Assembly: GCA_964036045.1 (NCBI GenBank)
Contig: OZ038378.1
Span: 61,752,001-61,816,000, forward strand
Reading direction: 5' to 3'
Length of the DNA stretch: 64,000 bases
DNA from: Eutreptiella sp. 'Long Island Sound 2002'
Taxonomy: Eukaryota > Protista > Euglenida
The notes below the pieces were generated by a model. It ran no database searches and was not told the DNA's origin. It worked only from the letters and a program-made list of their open reading frames with translations. The translations under genes and the position numbers were made by a program. Below, in pieces: positions 279 through 40,412 of the stretch. Each line of letters starts with the position of its first letter. Within the stretch, counting starts at the first letter, position 1.

Positions 279-559
279 GTGCTGGGGGGTGTACCACAAA
301 GGTTGAGTGAGTTGCTGGTTGGTACTTTTGGGTGTACGTACTTGTTCAACTTTTGGAAACTGGGGGCACAGAAGCATGAGTGTTTCTGGTGTGGGCGGGT
401 TGGTGGGGTGTTGACGGGATCTATTAATTCTCCTCCATCGGAAGGGATGAACAATGCATACGGGCGACACAGTGGGACACAGTCATGTGAAACCCGATGA
501 CCAATTTGCCTGTGTGCCTTGTATGCCCCTGTGTGCCCTGTTGCAAGGTTGCATGATGA

Positions 560-4110: not shown

Positions 4111-4119
4111 CCACCCACC

Positions 4120-4820: not shown

Positions 4821-4824
4821 AGCC

Positions 4825-7540: not shown

Positions 7541-7565
7541 CACCACCACCTTCCTGTGCACATTT

Positions 7566-7964: not shown

Positions 7965-8019
7965 GCGGAGTTACTCATCTCGTGTCAAGGTATCACGGTA
8001 CGCTTAGTGTGGTTGTATT

Positions 8020-8640: not shown

Positions 8641-8659
8641 ACGTCTGTTGCTTGCATGA

Positions 8660-19518: not shown

Positions 19519-19549
19519 GTACTATGCCGACGAGTCGACTTGGGTTGGG

Positions 19550-21343: not shown

Positions 21344-21982
21344 CTAGCAAAAAGCATCGTTGATAAGTACACGATGACCGCGGAAGGGCCTTGTCATGAA
21401 GAGCAGGGCAGGGAACGGTGGCCGATTCCGTGCTGTGTGCTCCTTGAATGGCGAGTAATATTGCAAGTTTCTGAACCACTCCACCACCATGGCATGGTCA
21501 AAGTTGAGGGTTGGTAGCACAGCTTTGTTGTCATTGTTGTTGCTCAGGAACAACCAATCCTCATAGGCCTCACGATCCTCCTCAGTAACGGGGCCAGGCC
21601 ATTTCTCGGGGGGAATCCGGTCATCGACCGGGAAGGCACGGACCGCCAGATTCCTGTAGGCCGTCCCGCCCATGGTCTCATGTTTGGAGGGGGATGTGTC
21701 CCCCACACAGGAATTTGTTGTTTTGGCCTTGATGTTGAAGCGTTTGCTGAGGGCCATGTAAAAGACAGTATTCCGTGCATTCAGTTGCAGATTGGACGGG
21801 AAGAGTCGCTCCAAAAGGCACTTAAACATGTTCGGCACTACGTGGCTCTGCGTGCGGTGCACTACGCAGTATTTGGCCAGAATTCGCTGTAACCGTATCT
21901 GGATCACTGTGGCACTGGGAGTTTCCTCGTGGATACTATCTGCGTCTACCACGGAACAGACGACGGGCGGAGGGGGCCTCAA
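21344..21982 (-). CDS. 212-aa ORF with a winged-helix-like (RFX / D5 C-terminal type) segment
   Basis: LAKYCVV...NTVFYMALSKRFNIKAK...GGTAYRNLAVR pattern; coding-like composition; likely continues in the 20996-21301 ORF. Confidence 0.4.
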   Translation of the reverse strand: MRPPPPVVCSVVDADSIHEETPSATVIQIRLQRILAKYCVVHRTQSHVVPNMFKCLLERLFPSNLQLNARNTVFYMALSKRFNIKAKTTNSCVGDTSPSKHETMGGTAYRNLAVRAFPVDDRIPPEKWPGPVTEEDREAYEDWLFLSNNNDNKAVLPTLNFDHAMVVEWFRNLQYYSPFKEHTARNRPPFPALLFMTRPFRGHRVLINDAFC

Positions 21983-22071
21983 CAGCAGCAGCAGCAGCAG
22001 ACATTGGGGGAAGACGGGCGACGGACGAATCTACGAGGTGCAGACAAACGGATGCACTGACAAGAACAAAC

Positions 22072-22929
22072 CTATGCACGACGAACATAGGTGCGAGGGT
22101 GCTTCACCGGCGGAGCCGTATTACGCCGGGCGTAAGGGTACCAGCGGTTGGAGGGTTGTGTGGGCCGGGCGTGAGGTTGCCAGCGATTGGTGGATTGTGT
22201 GGCACGCTTTGGTTGGGGCCTTGGTGGGTGCAACACCCCGCGCTGCATCTGCGTTAGTGAGAGGTTTCCATCGTAGCACCGCGTTGGAGACAAGGTGCAA
22301 CGCACCGTGCGCACAGGAGGTCGCACGCAGGGGTGTTGTGTGTGTGTGTGGGGGGGGGGGGGGGCATCCGCAAGAGGGAGCAAGGAGGTCTGTCTGTGGG
22401 CCAACACCTCGAGCAACGTGGTTTGGCCATAGGGCAAGGGGGGCAAGCTGATGGAAGCGGGCATAAGACTGGTGGGGCGGGGCTTTGGTGGTTGTGTCGC
22501 CGAAGCTATGAGCCTGGCGCGCTCCAGCGAACGGGACACGAAGTGGGATCGACTTACCCTCTCGCCACGTTGCCATGTTTGCACGTGGCCGCGGCTGCTC
22601 ACGGCGGACAAGTAACGTGACCAACCCATGTCAAACCTACTGTTCAGCTCGCCCAAGGGTAGGCGGAGGAGCTGTTCTGTGCGGGGGGTCAGTGGATCGG
22701 TGACAGCGGCCAGTGGCGGGGTCGGGAAATTGGAGGGGACTATCTTCCTTGGGGGGCTCGTTGGCATTTTAGCGGGATGTGGTGTGAAGGAGGGGATTGG
22801 TGATGCGGGTGTGAGCGGGGGCGGTGGGGGGAATGGGGGTGATGTGGGTGTGGGAGGGGCTGTCAGAATGGGGGGCTGCGGGGATTGCAACTGGCTGAGG
22901 TTGCGCTCTGCGTCTCAATTCCATGGGGA
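22072..22929 (-). pseudogene. 3' part of a Pro-rich ORF split by the nested TIR element; 5' part at 25501-25595 (MAWIFEPTLPSEEGAGWGDLLELLEFWDYPPSP)
   Basis: Removing 22930-25500 plus one GA joins the two parts in frame (DYPPSPWN*DAERNLSQLQSPQPP), with one stop. Confidence 0.6.
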
Positions 22930-25500
22930 CCCTTGGTGCGCGTTTGAAACCCAATGTTGTTCCGGCCAAATTGTTCCAATGTTCTAGGCTATCTGGCCGG
23001 AAAAAAAAAAGTTCAAAATTTATTTACCCCCCAACCAAGCCTACCCGTATATGGTGGCAAAATATGTTGTTTGCTAGCCTTGGGGGTCCCCGCTGGTATG
23101 CTCATATTTGTTGCCCGGCGCGTTGCCACGTGAAAAAAACTTGTTTTCAAAAACATTTTTTGTTAGAACACCATTGGAACACCGCTAGAACAAGTTATTG
23201 GAACGTCGCCGGAACAAGCACTCTACAACAAGAGCAAAGCACAAGGAAAGGTAAAATGGTAACATACATTGTTGTGTAGGGTGCCCCCCGGGGCCCATCG
23301 GGTTAGTCTCTTGTTCTCACCTAAAAGTCCTGCGTGGTCGGGGGCCCGGCGGGCGCCCCCGAACTCTTGTCACCCGCCCCACTATCCCCCCCATCCCCCT
23401 CACCGACCACCACCCCTTCACCCACCATCCCTTCACCCTCCACCCCTTCACCCACCACCCCTTCACCCTCCACCCCTTCACCCTCCACCCCTTCTCCCAC
23501 CACCCGTTCACCCTCCACCCCTTCGACCTCCATCCTTTCCCCCTCCAGCCCTTCGACCTCTTCCCCGACGCCCCCATCCCGGTTAGCCCCGGTAGCACCC
23601 AAACCTGCCCCCGGTCCATCCCCTTCGTCTCCCCCGTCCCCGTCCCCGTCGTTGCTCTCGTCCCCCTCCTCGTCCGCGTCCGCGTCGTCCTCCTTGTCCT
23701 CCTCCTCGGCCGCCATCATCTTGGCGAGGAACTTCTTCGCCTGCGTCTTGGTTTTCCAAACCGATGCTCTCGGGATGGCGAAGAGTTCGGGGTCGTTGGG
23801 GAAGGCGATCCAAGTCTCCCCAACCCCGGGGGGGCCACCCGCAGCAAGGGCCTCTTTGCCCTGCTCCATCCCCCACTGCCCATTGTCCCGAAAAACTACA
23901 TACACTTGCTCCCCCGCTTTGTATTTGCACCCCGCCCCCTCTTGCCTTTGGCTTGGCCTTGGGTTGGGGTTGGGGGGGCTGGGCCTTGGGTTGGGGGGGC
24001 GCGGCTCTCTTGGGAGCCTTGCGAGGGGGTTTGGTGGGCTCCTTGGCCGGGGGCGGGGCTGGAACTCCTCGAACGCCGAGGAGTCGGTGGTGGACGCCGA
24101 GGAGGAGTCCGTTGAGGAGTCGCTAGACGACTCCTCGCTGGAGGACTCCCCCGGGAGCCTCTTCCTTTTTTGGGGGGCTGGTTTGGGGGCGCTCTTGGGT
24201 TCCCGCTTGGGGGGGCGTTGGGGTTTGGGTTTGGGTTTGGGTGCTGTTTGGGGGGCTGGGTGGGGGTTCGGGGGTTGGGGTTGCACGGGCGGTGCACACG
24301 CGGGCGGGGCGGGGGCCTCTGCGGCCACTTGTTGGCAGTGCGGCGGCGCTGGGGACATGTCGCCAATGCTGCCCCACCCCTCGATGCGCGCCGCGAGAAC
24401 GCTGCCGCGGGCTGCCACGTAGTCCATCATGGCCGTGAGGAACTCGAGCACGGCGACGGGCTGCAAGTGCAACTGCTGAAGCAACGTACCCAAATAGATG
24501 GGCCGGGGATCGCTTCTTGGCCAACGAAGGATCACCCGTGGCCTTGGGATCCGAAGTGCTCACCGCGGGGGCCAGCTCCAAGGGGGCCAGTAGATCTTGC
24601 CAGCGCTGCTGGAAAGCCCTCTCAGGGCAAATCGGACGGGCGAATGGAAGGCCCGTGGTCGCGGTGTACTTCAGCCCCCGGAGGGTGTACACTTCCGAGA
24701 GCGTGCGCCAAGCGGATTTGGGCGCACGCAGGTTGAGGATGAGCTCGCAACACTCATCGGGGGGGAGCACCTCGGAGGCGTACTTGGCGATTGCCCCTTG
24801 CTGTATCTCGCGTACACAGCTTGGTTGGGCCAAGCGCACGGCCACCGCAAATTGGCGGCGGGCGTGTGGAGAGGAGATGGCCCATTCCGCTATGAGCTCC
24901 CCAACAAGATCCCCGTCCCGGAGGCTAACAGCACTAGCCAAATGGACGAGGTGGGTGGTTAGTTGCGCAACGCGGGTTTGCGATCTAGGCATGATGAAGC
25001 TACAACAATGAACTACGAAGCGAAATTTGGCAATGCATACCTCTAGGGGAAGATGCCCGTAGACCCACCGAGCATTCAGGCAAGGAACAAATACCAAAAT
25101 GGGACCCTAGGCATGGCCACAATGCACAAATCAAACAGGAGAATGGGGACGCCAACGTTGAAAAGTCATACAACGGTGCGTCTGAACTATAAGAAACAGC
25201 AGGCTTGCAAATGGATACGAAAAGTTCGAAATGTGTACACCTAGTGGAAGGCGGCACCAACGGCTCACAAGATGTCAACATCCCCCCGATGGGAAAGACA
25301 AGCCTTGGACGCGTTATACATGCAAGAAAGAGACAAAAAACATCATTTACGAACTTGGAAACTCATGGTGATGGATCTGGTTATCTGGCCTGCGACACTT
25401 GTTCCAGTGGTGTTCCCAACGAGATTGTTCCGGCGGGAATTGTTCCCATTGGGAATATTCCAGTCGGGAACAACATTGGGTTTCAAACGCGTACCAAGGG
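22930..25500 (-). mobile_element. 2571-bp TIR DNA transposon (CCC...GGG ends, ~34-bp TIR, 2-bp GA TSD), CMC/EnSpm-like, probably non-autonomous
   Basis: Left cccttggtgcgcgtttgaaacccaatgttgttcc; right reverse complement cccttggtacgcgtttgaaacccaatgttgttcc; GA on both flanks. Confidence 0.9.
23321..24990 (-). pseudogene. Frameshifted ORF of the nested element: RAG1/Transib-like pre-core segment joined to Pro-rich and acidic (EGEGV)n tail
   Basis: LPPDECCELILNLRAPKSAWRTLSEVY...TATTGLPFARPICPERAFQQRWQDLLAP; second frame 23321-24535 has low-complexity sequence with 15-bp repeats at ~23410-23560. Confidence 0.45.
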
Positions 25501-28500
25501 GAGGGGGGGTAGTCCCAGAACTCCAGCAGTTCGAGGAGATCTCCCCAGCCTGCCCCCTCCTCCGAGGGTAGGGTCGGCTCGAAAATCCACGCCATGGCAG
25601 GGGAAAGAGACCTGAGGACACGCACAAAACTCACCTTCAACTACTTGCAGCTGCCGAAGGCGGCATAATGACGCGGGTCAGGGGCTTCAGACGCTTGCGC
25701 CGGCGACATGGCCCGTTTGCATGTGGCCCCGTGGATGCTGATTGATGTTCAGAGGCTCGCAAGGTCCCGGTCCGGTGTATTCAAACTTGGGCTCGCACAA
25801 CGTCGAGCCATCCGGACCTGCTATTTGTCACATGGAACAGCACACTGTAGACAACAATACTCGGCAAACAAAATTCTTGCACACCAAAACATGCACAACG
25901 GCAGGCACAAAGACGAAGGAACAGGCAGTCAACTGAAGCTACGTGATGCACAGTGCTTTTTTTGTGAGAAAAAACTGCAACCATATTCAACCATCAGAAT
26001 TGTTCCTCCAAAAAAACAACGATTCCATCCCGTATCCCTCACACAACAAAAGAGTAAGAAGATGGTGTGACACCGATTTCTTGTTCTGCTTGTTCATTTT
26101 CAAAAAAAGCGACTGCCGTCCATGCCCCTGGCAGGCCACCTGAATCCGTGTGTCGCTCATCCTCACTGGGTTCCCACGGGTTAGTCGCGCCGCCGGGACT
26201 CCACGGATTCCGTTTTTCAGGGGGGGCGGGGGTGGGGCAGTGACCTGCCAAAACAAAAAAAAGACCCTACTTTAAGCGCTGACACTTCAGGGGTTGGGGA
26301 GGGGGGTGGTCGTCAATTGTGTGTACATGAACAGTTTTTTGGCCCAGGCAACAGAGGGAAACGCTCATGCGTGAGCAGTGGTACCGCAATCAGTTTCGAA
26401 AACGGGGCATGCCGGTCGGCAAAAAAGCAGTCATGGTCAATCACCGTCATCGTCTCAAGGCCCTATGTGCCAGCCACATGAGCCCACCAGTCAAACGGTG
26501 AAACCAAGGTCCTATGGGGGGAAACGGTCAATGTGTATAATTGGTCGGATGGTGACTTTTTTACAAAAACCCTTGCAATTTCCTTGGGATTCAGCAAGCA
26601 ATTGGGGATGCAAAGCTCCTGCCAATTCCAAGCAATGTGCCAGAGCATTATGGAAGCAATGCTCCTAGTATGTGCTTGGGTGAACTCCGAACGATCGTCA
26701 GAAGCATCGCTTTCGACATCGGAAGCGATCACCCCGACCAATTTTGGCAGCCTGGCTTCCAAAATCCCTAAGGACGGAAAAATATCGGAAGCGTTTTTGG
26801 GAGGAATATTCCCAGCAGCGCTGACAATTAACCTGTAAAGATCGGAGGGCACGTGCCAGGCAACGCTCACAAACATGCCCCGGTTCTCATCATTCTATGT
26901 TGTGCCCGTAGGACACATGTGACGAGAGGAGTGCCTTGGCATTGCTTCGCGGCTGCCCCCCCCCCCCCCTACGTGGCATTCCATCTAGTTGTTGTTTCCA
27001 AACAAGGCCCTGGAGAAGTCACCCATCTCCGCGTGTTGTGTAGGGGCTGCTTTCAGTAGGCCGCTGCAACGGGTGCAAGTGCTAGTGTTGTTTGTGTGTT
27101 CGCGGAGCCCAGTGGTTGGTGTGCTGCAGCGCTGCTGCATGTGGCATGGTGTGCCGTTTGCAAATCACCCGTACCCATTAGTTGGCACATTGGCGGTCTA
27201 TTGGTTGTTGTGGGGGTCGTTTGACTTTTTGTTCTCCAAACAACTCTGTTCTCAAGCCATCCACAACTTGCCTCTCTGTCTTTCCATAGTCATGAGCCCC
27301 AAATGCCTTGCTCCACACAAGCCCCAGCAGTGGCCCATTGGGCTCGAGATCCCAGAGGCGCAAACAAACAATGGCACTGTGCTACACGGGCCCCAGGGTT
27401 GATTATTTGGGGGGCCGGTCCCCTACGCGCACTTGTGGCTGCACACGACGCATCAACGGCCCTGGTTGTGGCCCACTCGGTGCACGTTCCTCTAAGCGTG
27501 GATGGACAAAAACATTGCCCCGCAGTGGCCCCAAGGCTGGCCCTATTGGTGCCCCATCCCCTACGCACACTCACCATTGTACGTAACTTCTCCAGGGCCC
27601 GCTGGCCCACTATGATTCCGATGTCTCGGCCGATATCCAAGTCAATAGGTCTCCTCGACGGCCAATGTTCCTGTTGTGTGCGAGGGGTACACTGAGTCGG
27701 GTTGGGTGGACCGCAAGTCGGGTGGAGAGCACTTGTGCGCCCCTGAGTGGGTTACCAATGTTGGTGTGCGTGTCTGCCGCCGCAGTCCAGCGGCCAGACA
27801 CCCTTGCCCGCTGTAACTACCGCAAACATCCGCCACCGTCTTGCTGTGCACTACCGCCTACCGCTGCTCTGCCGCCTCGCGGGCTGCCACACATGCTGAC
27901 AGCCACTTGCTATTCCCTCCGACCCCTCATGGACGACACTGCTTTCATCGTCGAACATAGGGTGCGGGTGGGCGGCACCCCGATTGTCCCCTAGCTCTCT
28001 GTAACCTTTCCACCGCCCCAAAGCACAGTCCCCCCCCCCCCCCCGGTGTCCTCGGCATTGGACTCCTCAGGACCCTTCGTCGCCTCTGCGCTACACAGCC
28101 GTCGTGCCGCGCCCCTATCGTGGTCTCGAGTGTTGTGGAACACGGCACTGCCCTCTTGCCCCAGAGCGCTAACACTTGCGGTTCCCCCTCGGGGTGAGGG
28201 GATCTACTATCGAACTGCCGCCCTGCTCTTAGGCCGGGGGGTTCTGTGCGCCCCGCCAACCATGCTGCCGACGGCCACCTCGAAGGTGTGTTGCCAGCCC
28301 CTTGTGGAAGGCTTGGCAGCGGGCTTGTGTCCCGCGGCCGCGGGCTCTGGTCGATCCCCACAGGCCGCCTCTCTCGCTATATACCAATGACCCAGTGTAC
28401 TCAGTATACCGTTCTACTCATTGCGGTGGGTGCCCACAGTTTGCAGCCTTGTGTGTGCCGGGAGTTGAATGGTGACCCCGTGCCTGTGTGTGTCTTGCCG

Positions 28501-31176
28501 TGCTAACCACCTAGCGTCTTCGCTACTGTCCCCGTGTTTGCACCGTTGCGTAGCAGCCGGCAAGTAGGTGGTGTCCGCCCCACTGTACGCAGTTTTCCGC
28601 TAGCAACACGGTGTGCTCGTTTCAAGGCGTAAAACCGTTCTCCGTGGAGACAAGCAACAGCGTGTTTAGGACCCTTGTGGGCCCCATGCGCAAGTAGTTC
28701 TACCAGTTCATACCTAAATGCCGCAAACTATCACCTATGATCCTTTTATCATAGCACTCATGGGGTAGCAGGCACGCAATGTATGCAAGTAATACTCTCG
28801 GCCATAGCATAAGGTGAGCAGTATTCGATTGCTCACACCTGGTCCGATGGGTTGCGCGTGTGCATCTCTGTACCCAAAACAGTGGTTTTCAAGGCTGAAC
28901 TTCCAAGAGCCAACCAGGGGCCTTTTCGGGCAGCTAGGGCCTACGGGAATCCAGTGTGGCCAGTTGTCTTTGCAAATGTGCTAAATCTCGAAATCGAGGC
29001 TACCGCGCCGCAACCACTTGAGTCTAGCTCTAGGGACGCATTGAACAAAAGTTGGGGGGAGGCGGCTCTCAAGGGATCGGGGAATTGGTAAAAACTCGTC
29101 ATTGTTGCGAACACTGAGGTGGTGCCTAGGAGGGCCTTATACCTACATACTCAACAAAGCGGATACCGTTACCGGGGTAATCACTTGACGGGCGTCCGCC
29201 AGGGAACTTGGTTGAGACCGAAAGACGGGTGTTGTCACAGCCGAGCCACACCAAGAGTCGGGAGGGGGGCTTCATTAACGGTTGGTTGGTGCACACCACA
29301 TTCTTGCAGACCCCGGCCACAGTGCGCGGGGGGGGGGGGGGGGGGGCTAGGGGCGTGGTCCAGGTCCGGCGGTGTAGACGGCCGTTTCCCACAACGCAGC
29401 CACGGTGAGGGGGTGGTGGCTCCCATTGCTTCATGTCGGCCGATCTGGAATTCAGTCCACGATATCCCGCGGGTGCTCCGGTTCTATGCTTCGGCCACCA
29501 GGAAAAGCCCCCCGTTACCCAAGCGCGAGCTGATAACGGACCTAGCAGCCCAAGAACTCCTCCAAAACAACAGACACCCCCGTGAGTGTGCACGGCCCCA
29601 CGCCAACCGTGGGCGAAAGAAAAGCCTAGCCCCCCTCCTCGGGCTGCCAAAAACCCCTACCAGCACAACCAATCGGCGCGTCGCCGGGGAGACGGCTGCG
29701 GCCCGCAGGCAATTGGTGTGCTTCTTCCACGCCGCCACCGGAGGAGGAGCTAGCCGACCCCTAGACCGTGATCGAAGGGTTGCCCCCCACCCCCCCCCCC
29801 TCCAAGTGTGGCGGGTTTAGGTGCGACCCATAATGTGGCAAAAGCTGCCATGAGCGAAATTGGTGGAATATTCTTCAGCTTAATCAACATGGGTAGCATG
29901 GCCCAACTAGTTCGCTGCAAGTGTTTGCGTTCTAGTTGGGGGTGTTGAGATGGTTAGAGGGCAGGGAAGGGTAGTTCAGCGGAGCTTGTGATTGGCCAAC
30001 ACTTGGGCTCCACCCCCCCCACCCCACCCCCACCCCAAATCACCCGCCCTAAGCTGCCCCTTCAACCCCCCCAAAACCTGCCGCCCCCCCCCCCCCCCCG
30101 GCGCGCTATGCACTGCTAGGGTGCAAAGTGCATAAAATTTCCTTCCAGCGCCTTTGGTGCCCATGGAGCGCCAGGCGCCTTCGGCGCCCGTCCCATCCTG
30201 AGTGCGGCACCTTTAGCAACGAATTGTTGGCACGAGGGCCGGCAGGTTCTGAGGGAGGGGGGGGGTTGCATCCTATGACCCGCAGAGTCGCCACCCCCCC
30301 CCCTGGGGTTTCCAATCCATCGCACACCTCCAAAAGGGTGGAGAGATGCATGCCCTACCCCTGTGATCGCCACCATGAGACAGAGCAAGGGGTTTTCGTT
30401 TCTTGTGCACACCACACAAGACGGAGACGGCATGCCCTCCCCAAGGTTGGACAACATTGAGCCAATTTGCCGCCTCTGAGCACTTGAGTGCTAGGCGGAG
30501 GGACAATACTCCATTCACGTTCCCACCGGAGTTGGGCCAGAGGGGGGTGGTGGGAGAAGGCTTCCCGATCCCTACGTTGACAGCCATGTGGCAAAGAGCC
30601 CGAATTCCCACCCATGTGCGGGACAACACGGGGTGGGGCGACAAGCCACAAAACTTTGGCCAACCACGGTGGTAGGAGCAGGGAACACTAAGGCACGGAT
30701 ACGATAAAGATTGGCATAGGATTGTACTAGCATTATATATTAGTATTAATTAATTAATCAATTGCCACTACCACGAGCAACAACACATAACATCACTACA
30801 TAGGTTCACCCATGTTTGCATCCTTGTGGCTTTCACACACATCGACCCCTGTTTCTACAACATATCCACACATCCATGGCGGTAGCAAGACATGACAATC
30901 TTGACCCTTGGGCTTTCCATACCTTGTCATCGCAAGGGGGGCGGGGGGGGGGGGGGTTCCCATCCCTTTGAAAAAATAATGATCACTCTTTCCCATCCTC
31001 GTGCCTTGTTTCTCAGTGAATCAGTTTATTCATGGAGTCCTGTTGGAGTAGCATATGTTGTATCGACATTCCCCAAGCTTGATAAGGATGGCGTATGGTG
31101 TTGTCGTAATTAACCTGACACATGTACCCTTAACACTCGCTAGGCGAATGATTGTTGATGTTAACGACTTGCGGTC

Positions 31177-32065
31177 ATGAAAAATTTTGTTGTAGGTGGT
31201 TGGTGTGTCCCAATGACAAGTGGGATGACATTCAACGCACGAAAAAATTTGTTGCTTTTGATGGTCGTTGGGATGGGATATTGCACCTTTGCGTTCAAAA
31301 TGAACGACGCCGAGATTGCAACAACCACTCCCACCCCAAGCCCAACTCCTACCACAAGCCCCAAACTTCTCCCCGGCTCCATGGCTACCCTCACATCCAC
31401 ACCTGACATTGGACCCCTCCAACCCACGGTCTAGAACGCTTACCGTACACAGGACAATCAAGATGAGGACATGCCGCATTGGGGTAATGAGCGTGAACTC
31501 CATGGCCCCTACCTAACACAAGCATGTGACGACACTCCGGGGTGTAGAGAATGCAACAACGAATGCTCGTCAAAAAAGGTCAAGGGGGCCCCAAAGCTTG
31601 GTGCCACCTCACGGGCAAGCACTTCGATGTTGGATCGTAACCATGGCGTGCACTCACTAGTATGACTCGTTGACTCAATAATAATGAGTCAAAAAATTGC
31701 ACATAAGAGAAATGGCAACTTTGACAATTGCTTTTGGTGGATGGGATCCACAACCAAAAGCTCTTTGTTAATCCCGTGTGGCATGATGTTTGCGTTCTCC
31801 GGCATGATTATTCAGCAACCGCCAACTTGGGGTCACCATGCCAACAGTCATGGTGACTTGCCACTCCCTCGTGGCATCGACCGATTCACTTCATTATCGA
31901 AGAGAACGTACCAACACTGCCTCACACATGGAGATGGAGGGATGGACATGCGGGTTCAAGGAAAACAAGTGGTATATTGTTGATAACAGCGCCAAACGCA
32001 ACCGGAATTCACCCCGGATGCCAGTACATGGAGGTGTTGCTCGACTCGTTTACTACCTAAACTAG
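31177..32065 (+). pseudogene. Decayed type-II membrane glycosyltransferase-like gene (GT34/MNN10-like)
   Basis: N-terminal TM (NLLLLMVVGMGYCTFAF), Thr/Pro stem, CRIGVMSVNS, FDNCFWWMGS (cf. WWxDxD), MPVHGG; frameshifted. Confidence 0.35.
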
Positions 32066-32099
32066 CCAAGCAAAGCTGTTGAGGGTGCGTTTTGGGGCC

Positions 32100-32839
32100 C
32101 AAGTTGGCGGCCAAAGCTTCCAAGCAACTTTCTAAGCGATTTTGAAAATTTGCAGATATTTTCCTACCAAACCTTTCTCGCAATATTAGTTGCATTTTGG
32201 GGCCAGATTTACGTGCCAAAACTTCAAAGCATTGTAGGTAGCAACTTTGAAAGCTGAAAGACATTTCCGCAACAATATCCGATGCATTCAGGGAGGGAAT
32301 AGTGCAACAAGAATACGTCATTACACAAAAACAAATAAAAGGGGAAAAGAAAGGGGGATGTGCCAATAAAGCAAAAATACTGAATCCCTGTTTTAACAAC
32401 ACGTAGGCGGTGGAGTGGCGCAATCTCGGCATCATGGGTCCAAACCCAAATCATGAGACATGCCATGAACGGTTCGGCATCTGTGATGTACCTAAAAAAA
32501 GTATTGTCCACAGAGCCCCGAGAACTCCAATGGTCCAAAAGCTGCACAGTGACATGGTGCAAAGAAGCGAATGGATGATGGTACCTAACTAAAATTGTGA
32601 AAGTTGTACTCCGCGTCAGTCAGCATCGTTACAAGACAACCATCACTGGACATGTTGTCAACATCCACAACCCAGTATTTGTGACTATGAATAGGGTTGG
32701 GTAAGGTCCCGCACTTATTGTAGAGCCACCGGAGATGCACTCCTCCTGAATCATCATATGAACCACCATGAGTAGGGCTACTATTAGTCCCACTATCACT
32801 GCTACAACTATTGCTGTTATTGTTGACGTAGCTACTCAT
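32100..32839 (-). pseudogene. Decayed GT-A (GT2-like) glycosyltransferase relic
   Basis: YWVVDVDNMSSDG (cf. IIVVDxxSxDG) and WVWTHDAE (cf. WxLxLDAD), in different frames. Confidence 0.3.
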
Positions 32840-32999
32840 GCAGCTATTGCTGCTGTTGCTACTCGTAGGGCACGTGACAGCTTTGCTTCCGTCATGGGTT
32901 GAACACGCTACAACACGTTCATTCCTTCATGACCTTGAAAGGAGGAGGCATTGTCTTTTCCCCGCAAAGGCAGTACACTAGCAATTGAAGCATGCTTAG

Positions 33000-35400
33000 A
33001 AACACTTAGATTCGCGATACAGTCGGTAGAAGATTCTAACTACCTTTTCCTTTGTCTTTCGGTGCTTTACGTTTGACAACACGGGATTTAAATTTCGACT
33101 GGCTCTTTGAACCCATGGCGTGCCACTAGCTGAAAGTTTCGACCTTTATTAACACCCAATTCCGCTCACATCACCATATAGAATTGGGCCTCCATAGTGT
33201 GCTCCACTATCCACCCCGACCCGGCTTGTAGGTAAATTTGCTTTCTTTTCGCCAATCTAGTGCCACTTGCAAAGCCGCAAGTATAGACGAACTATAGGAA
33301 CTTGTTTTGGAAAAATTGCTCGCAGTAGCACAAAGATTTGGGCCTCCAAAAGGAGCTTGACAATTCGCCCCGACTCAAGTAGTGCAAAAGGTGCTAGACT
33401 ATATTCCACGTGACCACTGTGCTACCGGAAGAGGTTAGTAGTCAACCGAGGCCCTGAATGAAGACCCAAAATATAGGGCGCTCACAGGAACGCAATTTAG
33501 AAAGATTGCTCACGTGAGCACAGAGATCTTGGGGTGGAAAGCGTCCTCGACTAACCGCTTGACCCGTAGGCCCTTCGGCTCATGTTTTATCAAACGAGAG
33601 TTGTCTGCGAAGCCTCAAGTACGGGCTAGCCGCAGCAACTTGTTTTGGAAGGATTGCTTGCTGGAGTAGTGAGATCTCGGCCTAGAAAGTGTGGCCGACC
33701 ATCCACCACATACTGACTCACAGTAAATTTGTCTCGGTTTTCAACAACTCGTAGCTGTTGGCAAAGCACCGAATTTCGGCTACCCACAGGAAACCATTTT
33801 GGAAGGAGTGCACTTAGCAGCACAGAGAGCTAGGTCATAAAAGAGCGCTCGAAGATTCACTCCACACCCTAGGAAAAAGGTGGTGCGCCCCGGCGGGCGT
33901 TCTCGTGGCGTATGTTGCACCAGTTGTGGATCTTTGGACACTGGTTCAACTGTGTGTGTTGTCTCTTGCACGAATCTGGTCAAACGGTGCACGTGGCACC
34001 AGGGAGGAAGCCCACCACCTTGAACTAGTTATTGCACGCCTGGTACAATCAGGCCACAAAACCTGAGCACTAACAAGACGCCAAAGCGCCCGCCACCATG
34101 AGGTGTTCGTCAAGCATGTGCCATGCATTGTATTTGACGGTTTTTAGACAATTGGCACACCACATGACACATATGGGACGTGTGTAGATATTTGTACTAC
34201 GTCGTGCCACACATATGGTACAATAGTGACGCTGAGCAGAGTGGTGCTGAACTACGAAAATTCGTCTGCGCCGCGAAGTTCCAAAACGTTTTGCAGATCT
34301 TCCCCGAAACCAATGTGAAAATAACAGTCCTTGAGGTCTATCTTTGCACCAAAGTGGACCTTTTGCAACAAAGAAAATTTTTGGGGCCACGCTTGTAGCC
34401 GAAACTACGGCGGTTGAATGTGATGGTTCCGTGGCTTGGCATTTAAAATGAATGTTACTTTGGGATGGTACAGAAAAAACTAGTGAAGGAGATGTTCTCC
34501 GAGAATCGCCAAGCCGCAGGGTGGCTCCCAGTGCCTCATATTCTCTGAAAATCAGCTTGGCACTCTCAACATCGCTTGGCGAACGCCGGTGGCAATGCAA
34601 CGGACGAAGACTTGGGCGTGAAACCAACCAAAGTGGAATTAAACCTTGTTAAATCGACTTCACAATGTGTGGGGTTGTGTTTACTTTCCACCAATCCACA
34701 CACACTCATAAGCGCATGTAACATTCTTTGGAAGCGAGAAATTGGGGCCGTGGGGAGGCATGGCCCAAGGGAGAGTTGAATACTTGGGAGATGGTTAGTC
34801 AACCTTGAGACGTGGTCGCAGCGCCTTGGAAGAGAAAAAGATTGCTAGATTTCTTTTTGTTGTTGCACCAGACGATTCTTCCAGTGGCCTTTGCCTTTTT
34901 CTCCACCCCAACCTTTGTCCCCACAGCCCTTACCACCTTTGCCGGGAAAACCACCACCGACCTTATTTATGGGATCTTGCCGTTGCCACTCCAATACAGA
35001 GAGGTTTTGAAACGAGTGTGTGCTCACGAAGTTTTGCCTGTTGCACATTTTTTGGACAATGTTCCACTTGTTCAACACCTACCATCGCGCGCACCAGATA
35101 GTAATCACCCAATCGATTCAAGTCGCAACGCGATCGTAATCTTAAGTCTTTTGAAGGAACTATTTTCCATTTATTGCGCCTCGTGTGCTATGTCTCCACC
35201 GAAGTAGAGAAAAACGAGTCTTCCGTCCATTTTGATATATTGTTTGGGAAGTGCTTTCAGGTGCTTTTGGATTGGCAACAATGTATTGACGGTTTTCAAA
35301 TGACATCTTCGATCAAAGATTGGATTGAGAAAAAAACCCCAATTGTTGTCAAAATCCCATATTTCTACGGCCCAATTTCAACGCCACAATTGTCGTAAAG
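33000..35400 (-). pseudogene. Old, heavily decayed non-LTR retrotransposon (RT region)
   Basis: Ordered relics TIPK...TITFN...GYK, QG...FRGRSA, GCGVNLRALFYDLAL, AEIRCFAN (YADD-like), RLRRQLSFDKT (GLxxNxxKT). Confidence 0.55.
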
Positions 35401-38400
35401 AGGTCGTGAGGTGCCCACAAGCTGGAGCAATTGCGACCTTCAAAGTGCGGAGAACAACACAAAAAGAACCTTGAAGATGCCGCAAATCTCACGAACTGTC
35501 ACCCTGAGATTGAAAGGATGGAGCAAAATTGCTTCGCACACACTAGGCAATCCAAAGCACACACATGGGTAGCAGCATAAAGACTCTAACTAGAACCAAC
35601 CAATGAACCAAAAAAAGAGGCGGAAACGCCGGAAAACGTGGATCGCAACCCCCCCCCCCCCCCCGAAGAGGAGAGGAATCAACAATAGCTACAATATTAT
35701 TGTTGTCGTGGGGTAGCTAGACCAAGGGAGCAATCAGAATTGGGTGCACAACCCTGCTACGAGGTGGCCGATTCCAAAGCACAAAAGAATCAACAGTGCC
35801 TGGAGAACTCTAGCCGACTCGTGTCCCTATGGCAAAGAGGACGCAAAAAGGGCTACATGGCCCATTTTTCTCAGGTTCTCCAAGGCAAAGAGGAGTGAGC
35901 AGCTCACGAAGAGGAAAGAAACATGAAAGAAACATACAACACTATAATTGTTGACCATTGAAGACCCCACTGCCACTACAAGTTTGCAAGCCGTTGTTCT
36001 CTATATGTGTTTTGGGTTTCACCGTGGAAGGGGTGAGTAACAAACGTTAGGTTGCACCCACGAAAAGTTGCCTCGTACTTACCACAAGGGAGGTGCACCC
36101 GCCAAATAGTGAAGTAACAAAACTCGAACTGAAGGCCGCAAAAGCAACCACTTAAGAAAAACACCCATTGACTCTTAGGCCACACCCAACAACATTTAAG
36201 GAAGTGAACATGCATCTCATCCCAGGAAAATTAAACCACACACATCAACGGTTAGTAACACCCGCCGAAAATTTGGCCACACCTACGCGGCCGAGCAATG
36301 TCCACCAAAAGTTGTGCCAATCCCGTAAAACATTCAATCACATCCACCAACAGTAGGGCTTCACCAGCAAACACTTGCACATTGAACATGTGGACACCCG
36401 GATAGCCACTACATCAGGTGACCTACATTGGGTTGCCATACATCTTTCAACAAAAAGTAAGCGGCCTATCGAGATTACCTTGTATCCTATATGGCATTGT
36501 TTGTGAGACATCCAAATAGGGTTATCATGGGGGCCCCGAGCAGGCAGCAAGCGTTGGATTGCCGTGTCCCCTATAAGAAGGCCTCTTTAGTGGTCCAACA
36601 AAGAGGCCATGCAAGTTGCAAGCTATTAAGCCACATTTAAGGTAGCGGGTGTTCCACATGCCTCGTGGAGAGGCGCACTGCGGGGTTGAGTATGCGAAAA
36701 TAGGGTTTGTTGTATGGGGGGGGGGGGGGGATCCGGTGGCAGTTTTGCCTGTAAAAAAAAGAGGCATGTGATTCTAGTGAAACACTCCCACTACATGCAG
36801 ACAAAGTTGCCCTCATCCGTTCCCACTACCTAAAGCCTTCACTACATGGTGTGAAAACACCAACCAACAATAACAAACAGCCCTAGACACAAATAAACAC
36901 AAATAAACACAACATTCTCGGTGTATCTATTTTCGATGAAAGAGACACTATGAATTACCGTTAAACCGGTGGCAATACTTATGGGTTGGCTATCAAACAT
37001 GGTATTTTCCAATCCCAAATTGGGGCACAAACATATTCTGTGGATTTAGAAGATACATATCATATTTGACTTGTACATTGAGGCCTTAGCATTTTGAGTA
37101 CATAGAAGTGGGGCAAATTCCGTTGTTGTAGGCGCGGAAAATAAATTTAGCGCCATTGGCACCATGGCCTATCACTATGTTCGGGAGCCTAGCGGGCAGC
37201 AAAAGCTAAGAAAGGCCACATACAATGAAGTACAGGGGTGACGCCTCCTGTATAGGGGGTGGGTAGAGATGTGGGGTGGGGGGGCTCCAAGCCCTTCTTG
37301 GCCTTTTTGACACAATGGCAACATGTAGACCCACAAGAAGAGCCGAAAGTGCTCGAAATTGCGTTTAGGGAGGGAATGTTTCCACCAAACATATATCGTG
37401 CAAAAAGATCTGCACGTTTGTGGCAACCCTTTTGCAGCGGCCCGGAGGATATGATAGGCACACCACCGTGACCAACATCACGCTCATGTGTTGGAGACTA
37501 TTGCACCCCAAAAGCACACTTGTTACGACAATTTGTCCCATGGGCCCTCCTTCATATGAAGCCCTAGTGCCATGCAACTCGGAGCCCTCAAATTGTCACC
37601 ATTTTCCTCACATTGCCCCCCCCTACTCAGCGGGTCCAGTTCACCTTGATTTGTGTGCTCTCTCTTGTAGCAGTCAGCATTATGCGGTCATGCCTTGGTC
37701 AGTTTTGTCCACAACTTCTACCCCATCCGCACCTAGGCCCAATTTAGAACTGCAGCATCCATTGCCTCCTCGGCTGCCATGTCCTCTGATTCGGCCGCCA
37801 TCCCTGCCCCCACCCTCTCATGACTTGGTCCCAAAACTACACCTCAGCCCCCCCGGCACAGCCACTTGCCTTGTTGGCCGTGATGGGAATGTGACAGCAT
37901 CCGGCACTTGCTACCTGTTTTTATGTTTTCATCACGCTTCGAGGCAATGAGTGCAGCAGCGATCCAATATCAATGCTTGAGTGCAAACACCCAACCTATG
38001 CAATCGCCGTTGGATGTTCAAAAGCAGCTAGCATCCCCGGAAAAGCGACATGAAATCAAAAGCTCAGGGATGTGACACTATGCCTGCTGCTCAAAATAAA
38101 TGAAATACCCCTTTCGGCAAGAAAAGGCAGCATGGCAAAGAGATTGCAATGCAAATTGCATTCAAAAGAGCTTCACTCTGTAGGTTTGACATCATCGGGC
38201 AATGCCCAGGAAAGGGGTGTGGCTAGAGGACTCCATCAAACTGCTGGAGCAAGAGGTTTTGCAAACTCAGAAGTTCGCACAGATAGCACGCCCCTCGGGG
38301 ACACCTATGCACTGTGTGCATACTGTGTACATGCTGCGGGGGTGCTGCATGCACATTTGTCGCCATTGTGTACCCACATTGTATGCCCAGGAAAACTATG

Positions 38401-38746
38401 ACCTCCTAAGAGCAAGGGGAAAAAAGCACCAAAACACAGCTCACCATTGTCATCGTCTTTTCCGGAGGCATCCTACTTTGCCACGATAGTTCATCCCCAA
38501 AACAGACTGAGGCTTGAAACAGGGTACCTGAAATTCCGATAGAACAAAATGACACACACCATACACAACACAACAAAACATGAACACAGTGGAAATGGAA
38601 CTGCGGAGAACACACACATCATGTCCCATTGCCATTCCGCTTTTGAATTTGAAACAGGGCACGTCTCAGTGCCATGTTTCACGGCCGGCGGATGGAGAGA
38701 AACCAGTGGCCTCGTTTGCCCCCCTTTCCGTGCACTCAGATGACAC

Positions 38747-39421
38747 CTGAAGGCACAAGGAGAGCCCAGGGCCTACGGTTGCTGCGATGCCCATGAGGTC
38801 TTCCGCATTCACCCCTGCGTGCCTGAGCGCTGCGTCCACCACGTGGTCGATGTTCTCCTGGTGCGCGGCCTGTGCAGCATCAGGCTTCACACCTCCCCAT
38901 TCCCCGTGGATCTCTGCCTGCGACGCCAGGACGTTGCTCAACACCCGTCCGTCCCCCGTCAACACCGCCGCCGCGGTGTCGTCACAGCTTGTCTCGATCC
39001 CAAGCACGCGCCAGTCTGCTGGGATCCCATGCAGCGGCGGCCACGATGCTTGTTCAGCCCCCGTCCTGGGTGGCCCCATGGTCCTGGCAGAGGAGGGCAG
39101 CAGCGGCGGCAGGTCAGGCATGCGGCCGGCCGCGAGCCACACCCGGACCGCTGTAGACCAGCGCTTGCTTGCAGTGGCGCGGAGGCGCGCGCGCCTTCCC
39201 TGCCCGCCGGGCCCAGTGCCCTCAAGCATCACCTCCAGCCGCCCCGGTGTTTCCTCATTGTACAGAGACTTACCAAGACGATTCGGCCATTCAATGAGAC
39301 AAATGCCATCACGGAACGCAGAGTCAAAATCCACCAGCTCCGCCATTTTCCCACGCTGCTTCAGCCGGTACGGGTCCATGTGGTACACCATTGGCTGCGT
39401 CCCGGTGGATGCGCCCTGCGC
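38747..39421 (-). CDS. tsaE-tsaD: Exon encoding the TsaE C-half, linker and TsaD N-terminus of a TsaE-TsaD fusion (t6A37 tRNA modification)
   Basis: YHMDPYRL and CLIEWP (TsaE), then in frame VLGIETSCDDTAAAV, SQAEIHGEWGGVKPDAAQAAH, IAATVGPGLSLCLQ (TsaD/Kae1); CAG acceptor at 39424-39422 and GT at 38746-38745. Confidence 0.93.
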
Positions 39422-39629
39422 CTGAATGAGTGAGTGGAGGAGTGAATGACTGGGCGGGTGAATGAGTAAGAAGTTGGGGGGCCGTGTGCATGAGTGGGTG
39501 TGGTGTATGGTTGGGTTAATGAATAAGCGCGGGTGATGGAAGGGGTGATTTAGGGAGGGTGTATGTGGGTGAGTGAGGCAGTGGATGAGTGAACCCACAC
39601 ACTGGCGACCACCACAAATGCACACGCAC
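39422..39629 (-). other. 208-nt conventional GT-AG intron within the TsaE domain
   Basis: GTGCGT...ATTCAG; removal joins SREE to AQGAS in frame; low-complexity CACTCA-type content. Confidence 0.85.
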
Positions 39630-40412
39630 CTCTTCCCGGCTGTACGTGAGGCAGAGCAGATACGTAGGAGAGGGCACGTGCAGGTGGGGCTGGCCCATAA
39701 ACTCCCTAATGAACCCACGCGCAATGCAGGTCTTGCCCGCCCCAAGGTCCCCCACGAGGGCCACGACGTCGCCGGGCTGTGCCAGGCGTGCCAGCAGCAT
39801 CCCCAACTGCCGCGTCTGGTCACTGCTGCTCAGCCAAACCATGACCTCATCATCGTGCTCACCAGCTGTGATGTACGGCCAACAGTGCTGCGTGTTGTCC
39901 GCGCCTCGTTCCACCGGACCCAGCCCTGGCACCGGATCCTGAAGGCGCTCGGATCCCACGGCGCACATTGCAACCGGAAGCGGCAGCACCCCTGGACACC
40001 CATTTTGCATGAAACACGGGCAATGGCATCGGCCATCAGGCACTTCTGCAAACAAATCCTGCTGCTCCAGTTTGCTTTGCCGCATGGCGCCCCAGATCCG
40101 CCTCCACCATGGTCGCAGCCCCAAAAGCATTGTGAACACGAGGGCGGCAGAGACTACGGCGGACGGCGACGGTGCACTGAAGATGCCGTTGGGGACAGGG
40201 GCCCAGGTTAGGATTAGGTTGGCCTTGGGCCGCACCTGCTCCATGGCGTTGGAGGCATATCGAGCGGACCCATGCGATAGTGCACCCAAAACATGTCTGG
40301 GTTGCAGATTTGGCCTGGGGAGCCGGAGAGGGCGGGGCACCCTGCGGCTGTGCAGTGAAGTCTGGGCCATGTGAGAGGAGGGAGGCCCTGAGAAAGCGGA
40401 CATGTGTGAGAC
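39630..40412 (-). CDS. tsaE: Exon encoding a transit-peptide-like region, hydrophobic stop-transfer helix and TsaE N-half
   Basis: R/S/P-rich, acid-poor segment, then AVVSAALVFTMLLGL-RPWWRR, then PGDVVALVGDLGAGKT (Walker A) and VPSPTYLL; phase-0 donor GAG|GTGCGT at 39630/39629. Acceptor at 40413 or 40388. Confidence 0.9.

What the first reader, a model, noticed from the sequence alone, without database searches (positions are those of the whole stretch)
38747..40412. Nucleus-encoded TsaE-TsaD fusion with a euglenid-type plastid presequence
Seen: TsaE motifs (GDLGAGKT, SPTY, HMDPYRL, IEW) run in one spliced frame through a ~50-aa Pro-rich linker into TsaD motifs (GIETSCDD, GGVxP...AH, TVGPGL), behind an R/S/P-rich, acid-poor segment and a hydrophobic helix followed by basic residues. 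Known: bacteria use separate TsaB, TsaD and TsaE, with TsaE resetting the TsaD active site; mitochondria use Qri7 alone and the cytosol uses KEOPS. Inference: a single-chain organellar t6A machine in a secondary green plastid, possibly TsaB-independent. I cannot confirm whether this fusion has been reported.
Basis: partly seen in the sequence, partly recalled or inferred. Interest (0 to 1): 0.8.

Follow-up and report, generated by a model that had tools for sequence, protein, structure and literature searches.

The report
Fused tRNA-modifying enzyme gene of a euglenid
This euglenid alga makes one protein that joins two bacterial-type enzymes for a universal tRNA modification (t6A). The same fusion occurs in many algae and protists without having been described, but the proposed chloroplast address tag is not a standard one.

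Summary
On the minus strand, two exons (40370-39630 and 39421-38745) encode in one frame a 175-residue N-terminal extension, a complete TsaE ATPase domain, a 42-residue Pro-rich linker and the first 87 residues of TsaD.

RNA contigs from four runs show the spliced leader joined at 40388|40387. They also show the GT-AG intron removed and exon 2 spliced to a further exon. The remaining 297 TsaD residues lie outside the window and are known only from a transcript contig; the full protein is 769 aa.

- The fusion is not unique. A single-origin family of TsaE-TsaD fusions occurs in Euglena longa, diplonemids, dinoflagellates, Perkinsus, Vitrella and the green alga Tetradesmus, where a HIT domain is added. 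I found it in databases but in no paper.
- The mRNA 5' end is fixed, and the protein has no N-terminal signal peptide. Its single strong hydrophobic helix is centred at residues 74-81, so the extension is not a canonical euglenid plastid presequence.

A plastid role remains the most plausible. The euglenid gene groups with algal fusions rather than diplonemid ones (AU p 0.007). That role is not shown, and neither is independence from TsaB.

The parts
40388..40389 (-). AG acceptor for spliced-leader trans-splicing. The mRNA body starts at 40387, and the 5' UTR is 40387-40371.
   Evidence: L001 begins with TTTTTTTCG joined to GGCCTCC. The genome reads tttctcag|GGCCTCC. Loose ends GAAAAAAA(AT) at 40388 appear in all four RNA runs.
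39630..40370 (-). Exon 1 coding part, residues 1-247: N-terminal extension plus the first half of TsaE.
   Evidence: ORF and translation. RNA contigs cover 39629-40388 with no differing letters.
40170..40370 (-). Residues 1-67: basic, Pro/Ser/Ala-rich, acid-poor N-terminal segment with no hydrophobic core.
   Evidence: 9 R+K, 1 D+E and 9 Pro in 67 residues. No Kyte-Doolittle peak before residue 74.
40113..40169 (-). Residues 68-86: the only strong hydrophobic helix, followed by RPWWRRIW.
   Evidence: Kyte-Doolittle 19-residue mean 1.64; 13-residue peak 2.51 centred at 74-81. An equivalent helix sits at 60-67 in the Euglena longa homologue P0405.
39846..40112 (-). Residues 87-175: Cys-rich spacer with 12 acidic residues and a weak second hydrophobic peak at 131-134. 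It ends in a CWPYITAG motif shared with other euglenid copies.
   Evidence: Composition, peaks. The only similarity to P0405 and P0408 is at residues 160-184.
39630..39845 (-). TsaE domain, N-terminal part (residues 176-247), with Walker A GDLGAGKT at 39752-39729 and SPTY.
   Evidence: PF02367 profile 2-67; TIGR00150 64.5 bits against a cutoff of 60.1; alignment to B. subtilis TsaE 5np9; coordinates.
39422..39629 (-). Intron 1, 208 nt, conventional GT..AG, inside the TsaE domain.
   Evidence: The joint 39420->39629 (cut +1, CT..AC on the plus strand) is seen in four runs. It is absent from L001. Ends GTGCGTGT...TCATTCAG.
39134..39421 (-). TsaE domain, C-terminal part (residues 248-343): HMDPYRL, IEWP and the conserved terminal strands and helix.
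   Evidence: PF02367 profile 67-111; columns invariant across 29 fusions; translation.
39008..39133 (-). Pro-rich linker of 42 residues (344-385). It begins with the 12-nt palindrome GCGGCCGGCCGC (39122-39133), where all short-read transcript assemblies break.
   Evidence: Translation and palindrome. Contig ends at 39113/39129/39134 and ten N in L001. The equivalent linker is disordered in the AF2 model of the E. longa homologue.
38745..39007 (-). TsaD domain, first 87 residues (386-472): GIETSCDD, GGVKPDAAQAAH, TVGPGLSLCLQ. The exon ends at CAG|GT|GT (38747 or 38745).
   Evidence: PF00814 profile 2-69. 100% match to residues 1-88 of transcript protein P0006. The loose end at 38745 continues as the next exon in four runs.
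1..38744 (-). At least 38.7 kb of intron 2. It holds none of the remaining 1.26 kb of the mRNA, and earlier notes place transposon-like elements here.
   Evidence: No blastn or tblastn match, and only chance 14-mers, for L001 1453-2714. Earlier notes on this window were not checked.

Best explanation
This is the 5' part of an expressed nuclear gene of a euglenid alga. The mRNA carries a spliced leader and conventional GT-AG introns, and the protein is 769 residues long.

From N to C the protein has:
- a lineage-specific extension of 175 residues: a basic Pro-rich segment, one transmembrane-type helix with a basic flank, and a Cys-rich spacer;
- a complete TsaE P-loop ATPase;
- a flexible 42-residue linker;
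- a complete bacterial-type TsaD.

It belongs to a family of TsaE-TsaD fusions found across eukaryotes. The fusion arose once. In the TsaD tree that family is sister to the plant GCP1 clade, which NCBI labels mitochondrial.

The euglenid copies group with algal versions (the chlorophyte HIT-TsaE-TsaD and Vitrella), not with those of their diplonemid relatives.

Proposed mechanism (inferred from the bacterial system, not shown here): the TsaD domain holds threonylcarbamoyl-AMP at its His-His-Asp metal site and transfers the threonylcarbamoyl group to A37 of ANN-reading tRNAs. After each turnover the tethered TsaE domain docks on TsaD, hydrolyses ATP and resets it. The tether replaces part of the docking surface that TsaB supplies in bacteria. 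TsaD probably pairs with itself, as mitochondrial Qri7 does.

The added N-terminal extension most likely sends or anchors the enzyme to an organelle. I favour the plastid (about 45%) over the mitochondrion (about 30%). To my knowledge only the plastid genome encodes tRNAs that need t6A in euglenids.
For: Gene and transcript:
- One continuous frame runs from TsaE to TsaD in the genome.
- Spliced-leader joint, intron removal and exon 2 donor use are seen in four RNA runs from at least three studies, with no differing letters.
- Transcript contig L001 carries the extension, TsaE, the linker and full TsaD with a stop codon.

Domain identity:
- TIGR03723 TsaD scores 318.8 against a cutoff of 296.1, and TIGR00150 TsaE 64.5 against 60.1.
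- The metal ligands and Walker A, SPT, HxDxYR and EW motifs are kept.
- In the AF2 model of the E. longa homologue, the TsaD part matches E. coli TsaD (TM 0.90-0.93) and the TsaE part matches B. subtilis YdiB (TM 0.83).

Family:
- Fusions in named organisms.
- The fusion clade has support 99/99 in the TsaD tree and 98 in the TsaE tree.
- Euglenids sit with Vitrella and chlorophyte fusions at 95/93. The AU test rejects a euglenid+diplonemid clade, p 0.0066.

Extension:
- Nearly all other fusions start at the TsaE fold, with Walker A at residue 22-62. Here it is at residue 207.
- E. longa has the same layout of basic segment, helix and basic flank, followed by a basic S/T/P-rich stretch of 53 residues.
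Against: - No single RNA contig bridges 39113-39134 in the linker. Continuity rests on a 23-nt contig overlap, an N-gapped scaffold and the absence of leader or poly(A) ends there.
- No enzyme activity, location or partner was tested.
- The extension lacks an N-terminal signal peptide, and the stretch after the helix is acidic, so the canonical euglenid plastid route is not predicted.
- Name searches of the Euglena plastid and mitochondrial proteome supplements found nothing; those files are truncated.
- Diplonemids, which as far as I know lack plastids, and Perkinsus also have the fusion, so the family is not plastid-specific.
- The trees lack cyanobacterial, opisthokont and prasinophyte sequences.
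- pTM of 0.68 does not show a fixed TsaE-TsaD docking.
Confidence: 0.6

Rival explanations
1. Same fusion enzyme, but mitochondrial. The basic acid-poor N-terminus is a matrix-targeting presequence. The helix with its basic C-terminal flank anchors the enzyme to the inner membrane, facing the matrix.
For: The TsaD domain lies in a eukaryotic clade whose other branch is the plant GCP1 group, which NCBI labels mitochondrial. The nearest prokaryotic TsaDs retrieved are mostly Alphaproteobacteria. The first 67 residues have 9 basic and 1 acidic residue, with helical moment 0.50. E. longa starts with MRRGNR. NCBI labels the Perkinsus homologue mitochondrial. From memory, Arabidopsis GCP1 was reported at the inner mitochondrial membrane; I did not check this here.
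Against: To my knowledge, euglenid mitochondrial genomes encode no tRNAs and import already modified ones, so the need is unclear. Eight prolines in the first 60 residues argue against an amphipathic helix. Name searches of the E. gracilis and diplonemid mitochondrial proteome supplements found nothing, which is weak evidence. The euglenid gene is of algal rather than euglenozoan affinity.
Confidence: 0.25
2. The helix is a signal anchor. It holds the enzyme on an endomembrane or an organelle's outer membrane with the catalytic part in the cytosol. There it acts beside KEOPS, or on a substrate other than organellar tRNA.
For: Most family members have no targeting extension at all, and several end in Lys/Arg-rich, NLS-like tails. 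A chlorophyte-type relative (P0412) has an N-terminal helix with a basic flank placed directly before its HIT domain. The flank after the helix here is strongly basic, which by the positive-inside rule would leave the C-terminal part in the cytosol.
Against: No precedent for a membrane-anchored cytosolic TsaD. The long basic segment before the helix is unusual for a signal anchor. A cytosolic second t6A system has no evident need.
Confidence: 0.1
3. The two domains are made as separate products, by internal trans-splicing or processing within the linker, and the apparent fusion is an assembly or annotation effect.
For: Every short-read transcript assembly breaks at 39113-39134, inside the linker, and L001 has ten N there.
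Against: The break coincides with a perfect 12-nt palindrome, a known cause of assembly breaks. No spliced-leader or poly(A) loose ends occur there, and the contigs of run X1 overlap by 23 nt. The genome frame is open throughout. Dozens of homologues from independent genome and transcriptome assemblies are fused in the same order, with both domain trees congruent.
Confidence: 0.03

Closest known systems
Bacterial TsaB-TsaD-TsaE t6A transferase complex (E. coli YgjD/YeaZ/YjeE; T. maritima TsaB2D2E2)
   Same: Both catalytic parts are of this type. The TsaD and TsaE equivalog models are passed, the motifs are kept, and the folds match.
   Different: Here TsaE and TsaD are one chain, in a eukaryotic nuclear gene with introns and a spliced leader. 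No TsaB is part of the protein, and whether a separate TsaB exists is unknown. In bacteria the three are separate proteins, and TsaE docks on the TsaB-TsaD pair (PMC6009658).
Mitochondrial Qri7 / OSGEPL1 / plant GCP1 (stand-alone TsaD-type enzyme)
   Same: A eukaryotic, nucleus-encoded, bacterial-type TsaD. In the tree the fusion clade and the plant GCP1 clade together form one eukaryotic group, 100/100.
   Different: Those enzymes work without TsaE, as homodimers. Reviews state that TsaE and TsaB have no eukaryotic homologues (PMC4615747) and that the organellar system has two components (PMC11077089). This protein keeps an intact TsaE.
Archaeal Kae1-Bud32 fusion (MJ1130, HVO_1895)
   Same: A natural fusion of the t6A transferase with the ATPase that drives its turnover.
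   Different: Unrelated ATPase (the Bud32 kinase fold rather than the TsaE P-loop), opposite domain order, and part of KEOPS.
Plasmodium apicoplast Kae1 (PF3D7_0408900)
   Same: A plastid-directed member of the TsaD/Kae1 family in a secondary plastid (PMC4615747).
   Different: That protein is Kae1-like, not TsaD-like, and has no TsaE domain.
Euglena class I/II plastid-targeting presequences
   Same: A long N-terminal extension with a basic, hydroxylated, Pro-rich region and a hydrophobic helix. The N-terminus is verified by the spliced leader.
   Different: No hydrophobic signal peptide within residues 9-60. The single strong peak is at 74-81, and the stretch after it is acidic.

Membership tests
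TsaE (PF02367 / TIGR00150) | Profile score above the curated cutoff | tested here: met
   TIGR00150 scores 64.5 bits against 60.1. Pfam scores 92.1 bits against 26.6 on the spliced sequence.
TsaE (PF02367 / TIGR00150) | Walker A GxxGxGK[TS], SPT[FY], HxDxYR and EW motifs | tested here: met
   GDLGAGKT, SPTY, HMDPYRL and IEWP are present. They are invariant in 29 fusions.
TsaE (PF02367 / TIGR00150) | ATP hydrolysis that depends on TsaD(B) | not testable with these tools
   Needs a biochemical assay.
TsaD (PF00814 / TIGR03723) | Profile score above the curated cutoff over the whole domain | tested here: met
   TIGR03723 scores 318.8 bits against 296.1 on transcript protein P0006. Only profile positions 2-69 lie in the window.
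TsaD (PF00814 / TIGR03723) | Metal ligands His-x3-His and Asp; SGGH and GGVAAN motifs | tested here: met
   HHMEAH, CTDNG, SGGH and GGVAAN align with E. coli TsaD and are invariant in the alignment. All lie outside the window, on L001.
TsaD (PF00814 / TIGR03723) | Two-lobed ASKHA fold of TsaD | tested here: met
   The AF2 model of the E. longa homologue matches 4wq5/4ydu with TM 0.90-0.93. The window's own protein was not folded.
Bacterial TsaBDE system | A TsaB partner that pairs with TsaD and forms part of the TsaE docking site | not tested
   No TsaB domain is in the protein; there is only a weak paralogue hit of 31.6 bits against a cutoff of 69.3. The rest of the genome could not be searched, and the earlier notes hold no TsaB.
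Eukaryotic TsaE-TsaD fusion family (not named in the literature) | TsaE N-terminal to TsaD in one chain, with both domains inside the fusion clades | tested here: met
   The TsaD tree supports the clade at 99/99 and the TsaE tree at 98.
Euglenid class I/II plastid presequence | Hydrophobic signal peptide near the N-terminus (published range: residues 9-60) | tested here: not met
   No peak before residue 74, and the strong peak is at 74-81. Range from 10.1101/573709. The N-terminus is fixed by the spliced leader.
Euglenid class I/II plastid presequence | Transit-peptide-like region after the signal peptide: net positive, S/T/A/P-rich, few acidic residues | tested here: not met
   Residues 87-175 have 7 basic, 12 acidic and 4 S+T. 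In E. longa the equivalent 53 residues do fit: 6 basic, 1 acidic, 11 S+T.
Euglenid class I/II plastid presequence | Second hydrophobic stop-transfer domain about 60 residues after the first (class I only) | tested here: inconclusive
   A weak peak of 1.86 lies at 131-134, about 55 residues after the first, but it holds three prolines.
Mitochondrial matrix presequence | Basic, acid-poor N-terminus able to form an amphipathic helix | tested here: inconclusive
   9 basic and 1 acidic residue in 67, with maximum moment 0.50, but 8 prolines in the first 60.

The most novel reading that the evidence does not exclude
Many algae and protists carry a so far undescribed third layout of the t6A machinery: a single-chain TsaE-TsaD enzyme, in green algae with a HIT nucleotide-hydrolase domain in front. 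It arose once, works without TsaB, and spread among lineages. Euglenophytes took it from an alga, duplicated it, and gave one copy a non-canonical address tag so that it modifies plastid-encoded tRNAs.
Probability: 0.3. Interest if true: 0.75.

Novelty: new variant of a known kind. Interest (0 to 1): 0.55.

Why it matters
Reviews of t6A synthesis describe three layouts: bacterial TsaB/D/E, cytosolic and archaeal KEOPS, and a minimal mitochondrial Qri7. They state that TsaE has no eukaryotic homologue.

A conserved eukaryotic TsaE-TsaD fusion contradicts that statement. It offers a natural single-chain form for asking what the TsaE ATPase does and whether TsaB is dispensable. It also bears on an open question: which enzyme makes t6A in plastids.

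The HIT domain fused in green algae hints at a link between handling of the acyl-adenylate (TC-AMP) and the transfer step.

For this locus itself the gain is smaller. It is one more member of that family, with an unusual N-terminal extension whose destination is unknown.

Tried and rejected
- Remaining TsaD exons in the window: blastn, tblastn and exact 14-mers found none.
- Euglena plastid proteome, Euglena mitochondrial proteome, diplonemid mitochondrial proteome and E. longa transcriptome papers, searched by enzyme names and by transcript id: nothing found. The stored supplements are truncated, so this is weak.
- Literature searches for a described TsaE-TsaD fusion or a eukaryotic TsaE: none found. 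One broad search was uninformative.
- Metagenome-contig scan with the TsaD domain, to find more euglenid homologues: it returned only bacterial TsaDs at 36-45% identity.
- Genome-contig scan: the nearest prokaryotes are mostly Alphaproteobacteria. The search patterns exclude cyanobacterial-type sequences, so a cyanobacterial origin could not be tested directly.
- Naming the closest stand-alone TsaEs: only Caenispirillum and Dongia carried readable names.
- An upstream exon encoding a signal peptide: rejected, because the spliced leader joins 17 nt before the first ATG in every run.
- Residues 87-175 as a decayed HIT domain: no similarity to HIT domains was found. The E. gracilis paralogue P0408 does retain HIT similarity.
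- AF2 pTM as a test of TsaE docking on TsaD in cis: a value of 0.68 decides nothing.
- Rfam on the whole window: no hits.
Full report
**What is in the sequence**

The feature lies on the minus strand. Two long ORFs (39516-40493 and 38666-39823) carry Pfam hits:
- TsaE, profile positions 2-67, E 2.9e-14.
- TsaE, profile positions 67-111, E 4.3e-08.
- TsaD, profile positions 2-69, E 4.6e-17.

Joining the ORFs across a GT..AG intron (39629-39422, 208 nt) gives one frame. In order it encodes:
- an extension of 175 residues;
- TsaE (residues 176-343), with GDLGAGKT, SPTY, HMDPYRL and IEWP;
- a 42-residue Pro-rich linker (39133-39008);
- the first 87 residues of TsaD (39007-38747), with GIETSCDD, GGVKPDAAQAAH and TVGPGLSLCLQ.

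**Transcript evidence**

A JGI transcript contig, L001 (2714 nt), matches both exons with the intron removed. It continues through a complete TsaD (P0006, 384 aa) to a stop codon.

L001 starts with TTTTTTTCG, the tail of the euglenid spliced leader. That tail is joined to GGCCTCC, exactly after a genomic tttctcag acceptor.

I laid Logan contigs of four RNA runs, from at least three studies, on 37500-41000. They show:
- the same leader joint at 40388;
- the same intron joint;
- use of the exon 2 donor at 38745, continuing into the next exon;
- no differing letters.

The first ATG (40370) lies 17 nt after the leader, so the N-terminus MAQTSLHSRR... is complete. The assembled protein is 769 residues.

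The rest of the mRNA (L001 1453-2714) has no match anywhere in the window. Intron 2 is therefore at least 38.7 kb, or the next exons lie elsewhere. The finding's coordinates cover only about a quarter of TsaD.

One weakness remains. No single contig bridges 39113-39134, and L001 has ten N there. The gap coincides with a perfect 12-nt palindrome, GCGGCCGGCCGC, at the start of the linker. No leader or poly(A) loose ends occur there, the two contigs of run X1 overlap by 23 nt, and the genome frame is open. I take this as an assembly break, not as evidence for two messages.

**Domain identity**

- On the transcript protein, TsaD passes NCBI's bacterial equivalog model (318.8 bits against a cutoff of 296.1). 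TsaE passes its model (64.5 against 60.1).
- The alignment to E. coli TsaD keeps the metal ligands (HHMEAH, CTDNG), SGGH and GGVAAN.
- The alignment to B. subtilis TsaE keeps the nucleotide-binding motifs.
- An AF2 model of the core of the Euglena longa homologue has mean pLDDT 83.4 and pTM 0.68, with a disordered linker.
- Its TsaD part matches E. coli TsaD at TM 0.90-0.93, and its TsaE part matches B. subtilis YdiB at 0.83.

**The fusion is a family, not a one-off**

Word-based and exhaustive protein searches and cluster look-ups found the same TsaE-linker-TsaD order in:
- Euglena longa (P0405, 738 aa);
- the diplonemids Lacrimia and Artemidia (P0136 carries a Hemistasia-like transcript label, read from memory);
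- dinoflagellates: Symbiodinium (named 'GCP1'), Cladocopium and Polarella (Effrenium and Durusdinium entries have only TsaD called);
- Perkinsus olseni, named 'mitochondrial' by NCBI;
- the chromerid Vitrella;
- the green alga Tetradesmus obliquus;
- many unnamed metagenome and transcriptome proteins.

In Tetradesmus and a relative (P0412), a HIT domain precedes TsaE (Pfam E 3.5e-09 and 5e-20).

In a careful maximum-likelihood tree of the TsaD domain:
- All eukaryotic sequences form one clade (100/100).
- All the proteins with both domains, plus a few for which only TsaD is called, fall in one subclade (99/99), sister to the non-fused plant and green-algal GCP1 clade (96/87).

In a quick TsaE tree the fused TsaE domains also form one clade (98). 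The fusion therefore arose once.

Reviews state that TsaE and TsaB have no homologues in Eukarya (PMC4615747), and that only a two-component system exists in organelles (PMC11077089). I found no paper that describes this fusion. It is present in databases but not described in the library I could search.

**Origin of the euglenid copy**

The window's protein and the E. longa protein are sisters (100/100). They sit with Vitrella and the chlorophyte HIT-type fusions (95/93). Diplonemids sit with dinoflagellates (96/86). An AU test rejects a euglenid+diplonemid clade (p 0.0066).

A partial E. gracilis protein (P0408) is only 55% identical to the E. longa protein in TsaE, so it is most likely a paralogue. 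Its N-terminal part is homologous to the chlorophyte HIT domain (E 6e-6).

This points to an algal source for the euglenid genes, followed by duplication. In one copy the HIT part was replaced by the present extension.

Limits: the trees lack cyanobacterial, opisthokont and prasinophyte sequences. The prokaryotic sample, mostly Alphaproteobacteria at 41-46% identity, was chosen by search patterns that cyanobacterial sequences would not match.

**The N-terminal extension**

Nearly all other family members begin at the TsaE fold, with Walker A at residue 22-62. Here it is at residue 207. The extension consists of:
- 67 residues with 9 basic and 1 acidic residue and 9 prolines;
- one hydrophobic helix (residues 68-86) followed by RPWWRRIW;
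- an 89-residue Cys-rich spacer with 12 acidic residues.

E. longa has the same layout, with its helix centred at 60-67. It is followed by a basic, S/T/P-rich stretch.

The Euglena gracilis plastid proteome study places signal peptides at residues 9-60 and stop-transfer signals at 97-130. It also reports that 16% of plastid proteins have neither (10.1101/573709). Here the strong peak is centred at 74-81, between those ranges. A weak, proline-containing peak follows at 131-134.

The defining signal peptide of the canonical euglenid plastid presequence is therefore not met. The segment could equally be read as:
- a mitochondrial presequence plus a membrane anchor; or
- a signal anchor.

Name and id searches of organelle proteome supplements gave nothing.

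**Most likely working**

By analogy with the bacterial system (PMC6009658; an inference), the TsaD domain transfers the threonylcarbamoyl group from TC-AMP to A37 of ANN-reading tRNAs. The tethered TsaE hydrolyses ATP to reset TsaD after each turnover. Tethering may compensate for the missing TsaB contacts, and TsaD may pair with itself as Qri7 does.

I favour the plastid as the site. To my knowledge, euglenid plastid genomes encode the tRNAs that need t6A while the mitochondrial genomes encode none. The gene has algal affinity, and the non-photosynthetic but plastid-bearing E. longa keeps it with a more transit-peptide-like stretch.

My rough weights:
- plastid, about 45%;
- mitochondrion, about 30%;
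- cytosol-facing anchor or other, the remainder.

**Verdict**

The locus is a new member of a widespread fusion family that the t6A literature has overlooked. The family is a new variant of a known kind and of real interest to that field. The plastid claim and the TsaB-independence claim remain hypotheses.

Noticed in passing
related proteins P0412, P0415, P0551, P0552 (Tetradesmus obliquus and a relative): Green-algal members of the family carry a HIT (histidine triad) domain in front of TsaE-TsaD. P0412 has, in addition, an N-terminal hydrophobic helix with a basic flank. A HIT hydrolase fused to an enzyme that uses the acyl-adenylate TC-AMP suggests a functional link.
   Followed up: partly
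related protein P0408 (Euglena gracilis EG_transcript_22564, partial): A second euglenid TsaE gene whose N-terminal part is a decayed HIT domain (no Pfam hit; BLAST E 6e-6 to P0412). It is only 55% identical to the E. longa protein in TsaE, so euglenids probably have two paralogues.
   Followed up: partly
related proteins P0421, P0135, P0136, P0407, P0005, P0010: Diplonemid, chromerid, Perkinsus and dinoflagellate-like fusions lack any N-terminal extension. They end in Lys/Arg-rich tails that look like nuclear localisation signals or tRNA-binding appendages.
   Followed up: no
related proteins P0429, P0431, P0436, P0427, P0430, P0448, P0477: Stand-alone TsaE proteins of 250-275 residues with N-terminal extensions of 40-70 residues. 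Three that I read also share a C-terminal part containing DDPWGF. They form their own clade apart from short bacterial TsaEs. They may be organelle-targeted eukaryotic TsaEs.
   Followed up: no
related protein P0134 (UniRef K1P1Q4, Magallana gigas): An 'oyster' TsaD sits inside the protist fusion clade. It is probably a contaminant or a truncated gene model.
   Followed up: no
window 39122-39133: A perfect 12-nt palindrome, GCGGCCGGCCGC, in coding sequence. It coincides with the break point of every short-read transcript assembly of this gene.
   Followed up: yes
window 41600-53994: Long, degenerate arrays of an 85-bp tandem repeat (64-83% matches) begin about 1.2 kb upstream of the gene.
   Followed up: no
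window 55668-64000: GC-rich satellite arrays (GC 0.68-0.73) with units of 47, 82 and 94 bp run to the end of the window.
   Followed up: no
window 40482-40763 (+): A 93-residue ORF directly upstream of the gene, on the other strand. Judged by eye only, it resembles the stretch before the reverse transcriptase of retroelement polyproteins.
   Followed up: no
window 37660-37822: One 163-nt contig of an estuary metatranscriptome run lies here, inside intron 2. It may be a transposon or another small transcript.
   Followed up: no
sequencing runs X4-X7: The gene's mRNA is present, with no differing letters in the two runs laid, in estuary metatranscriptomes. The organism therefore lives in estuarine water.
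   Followed up: no
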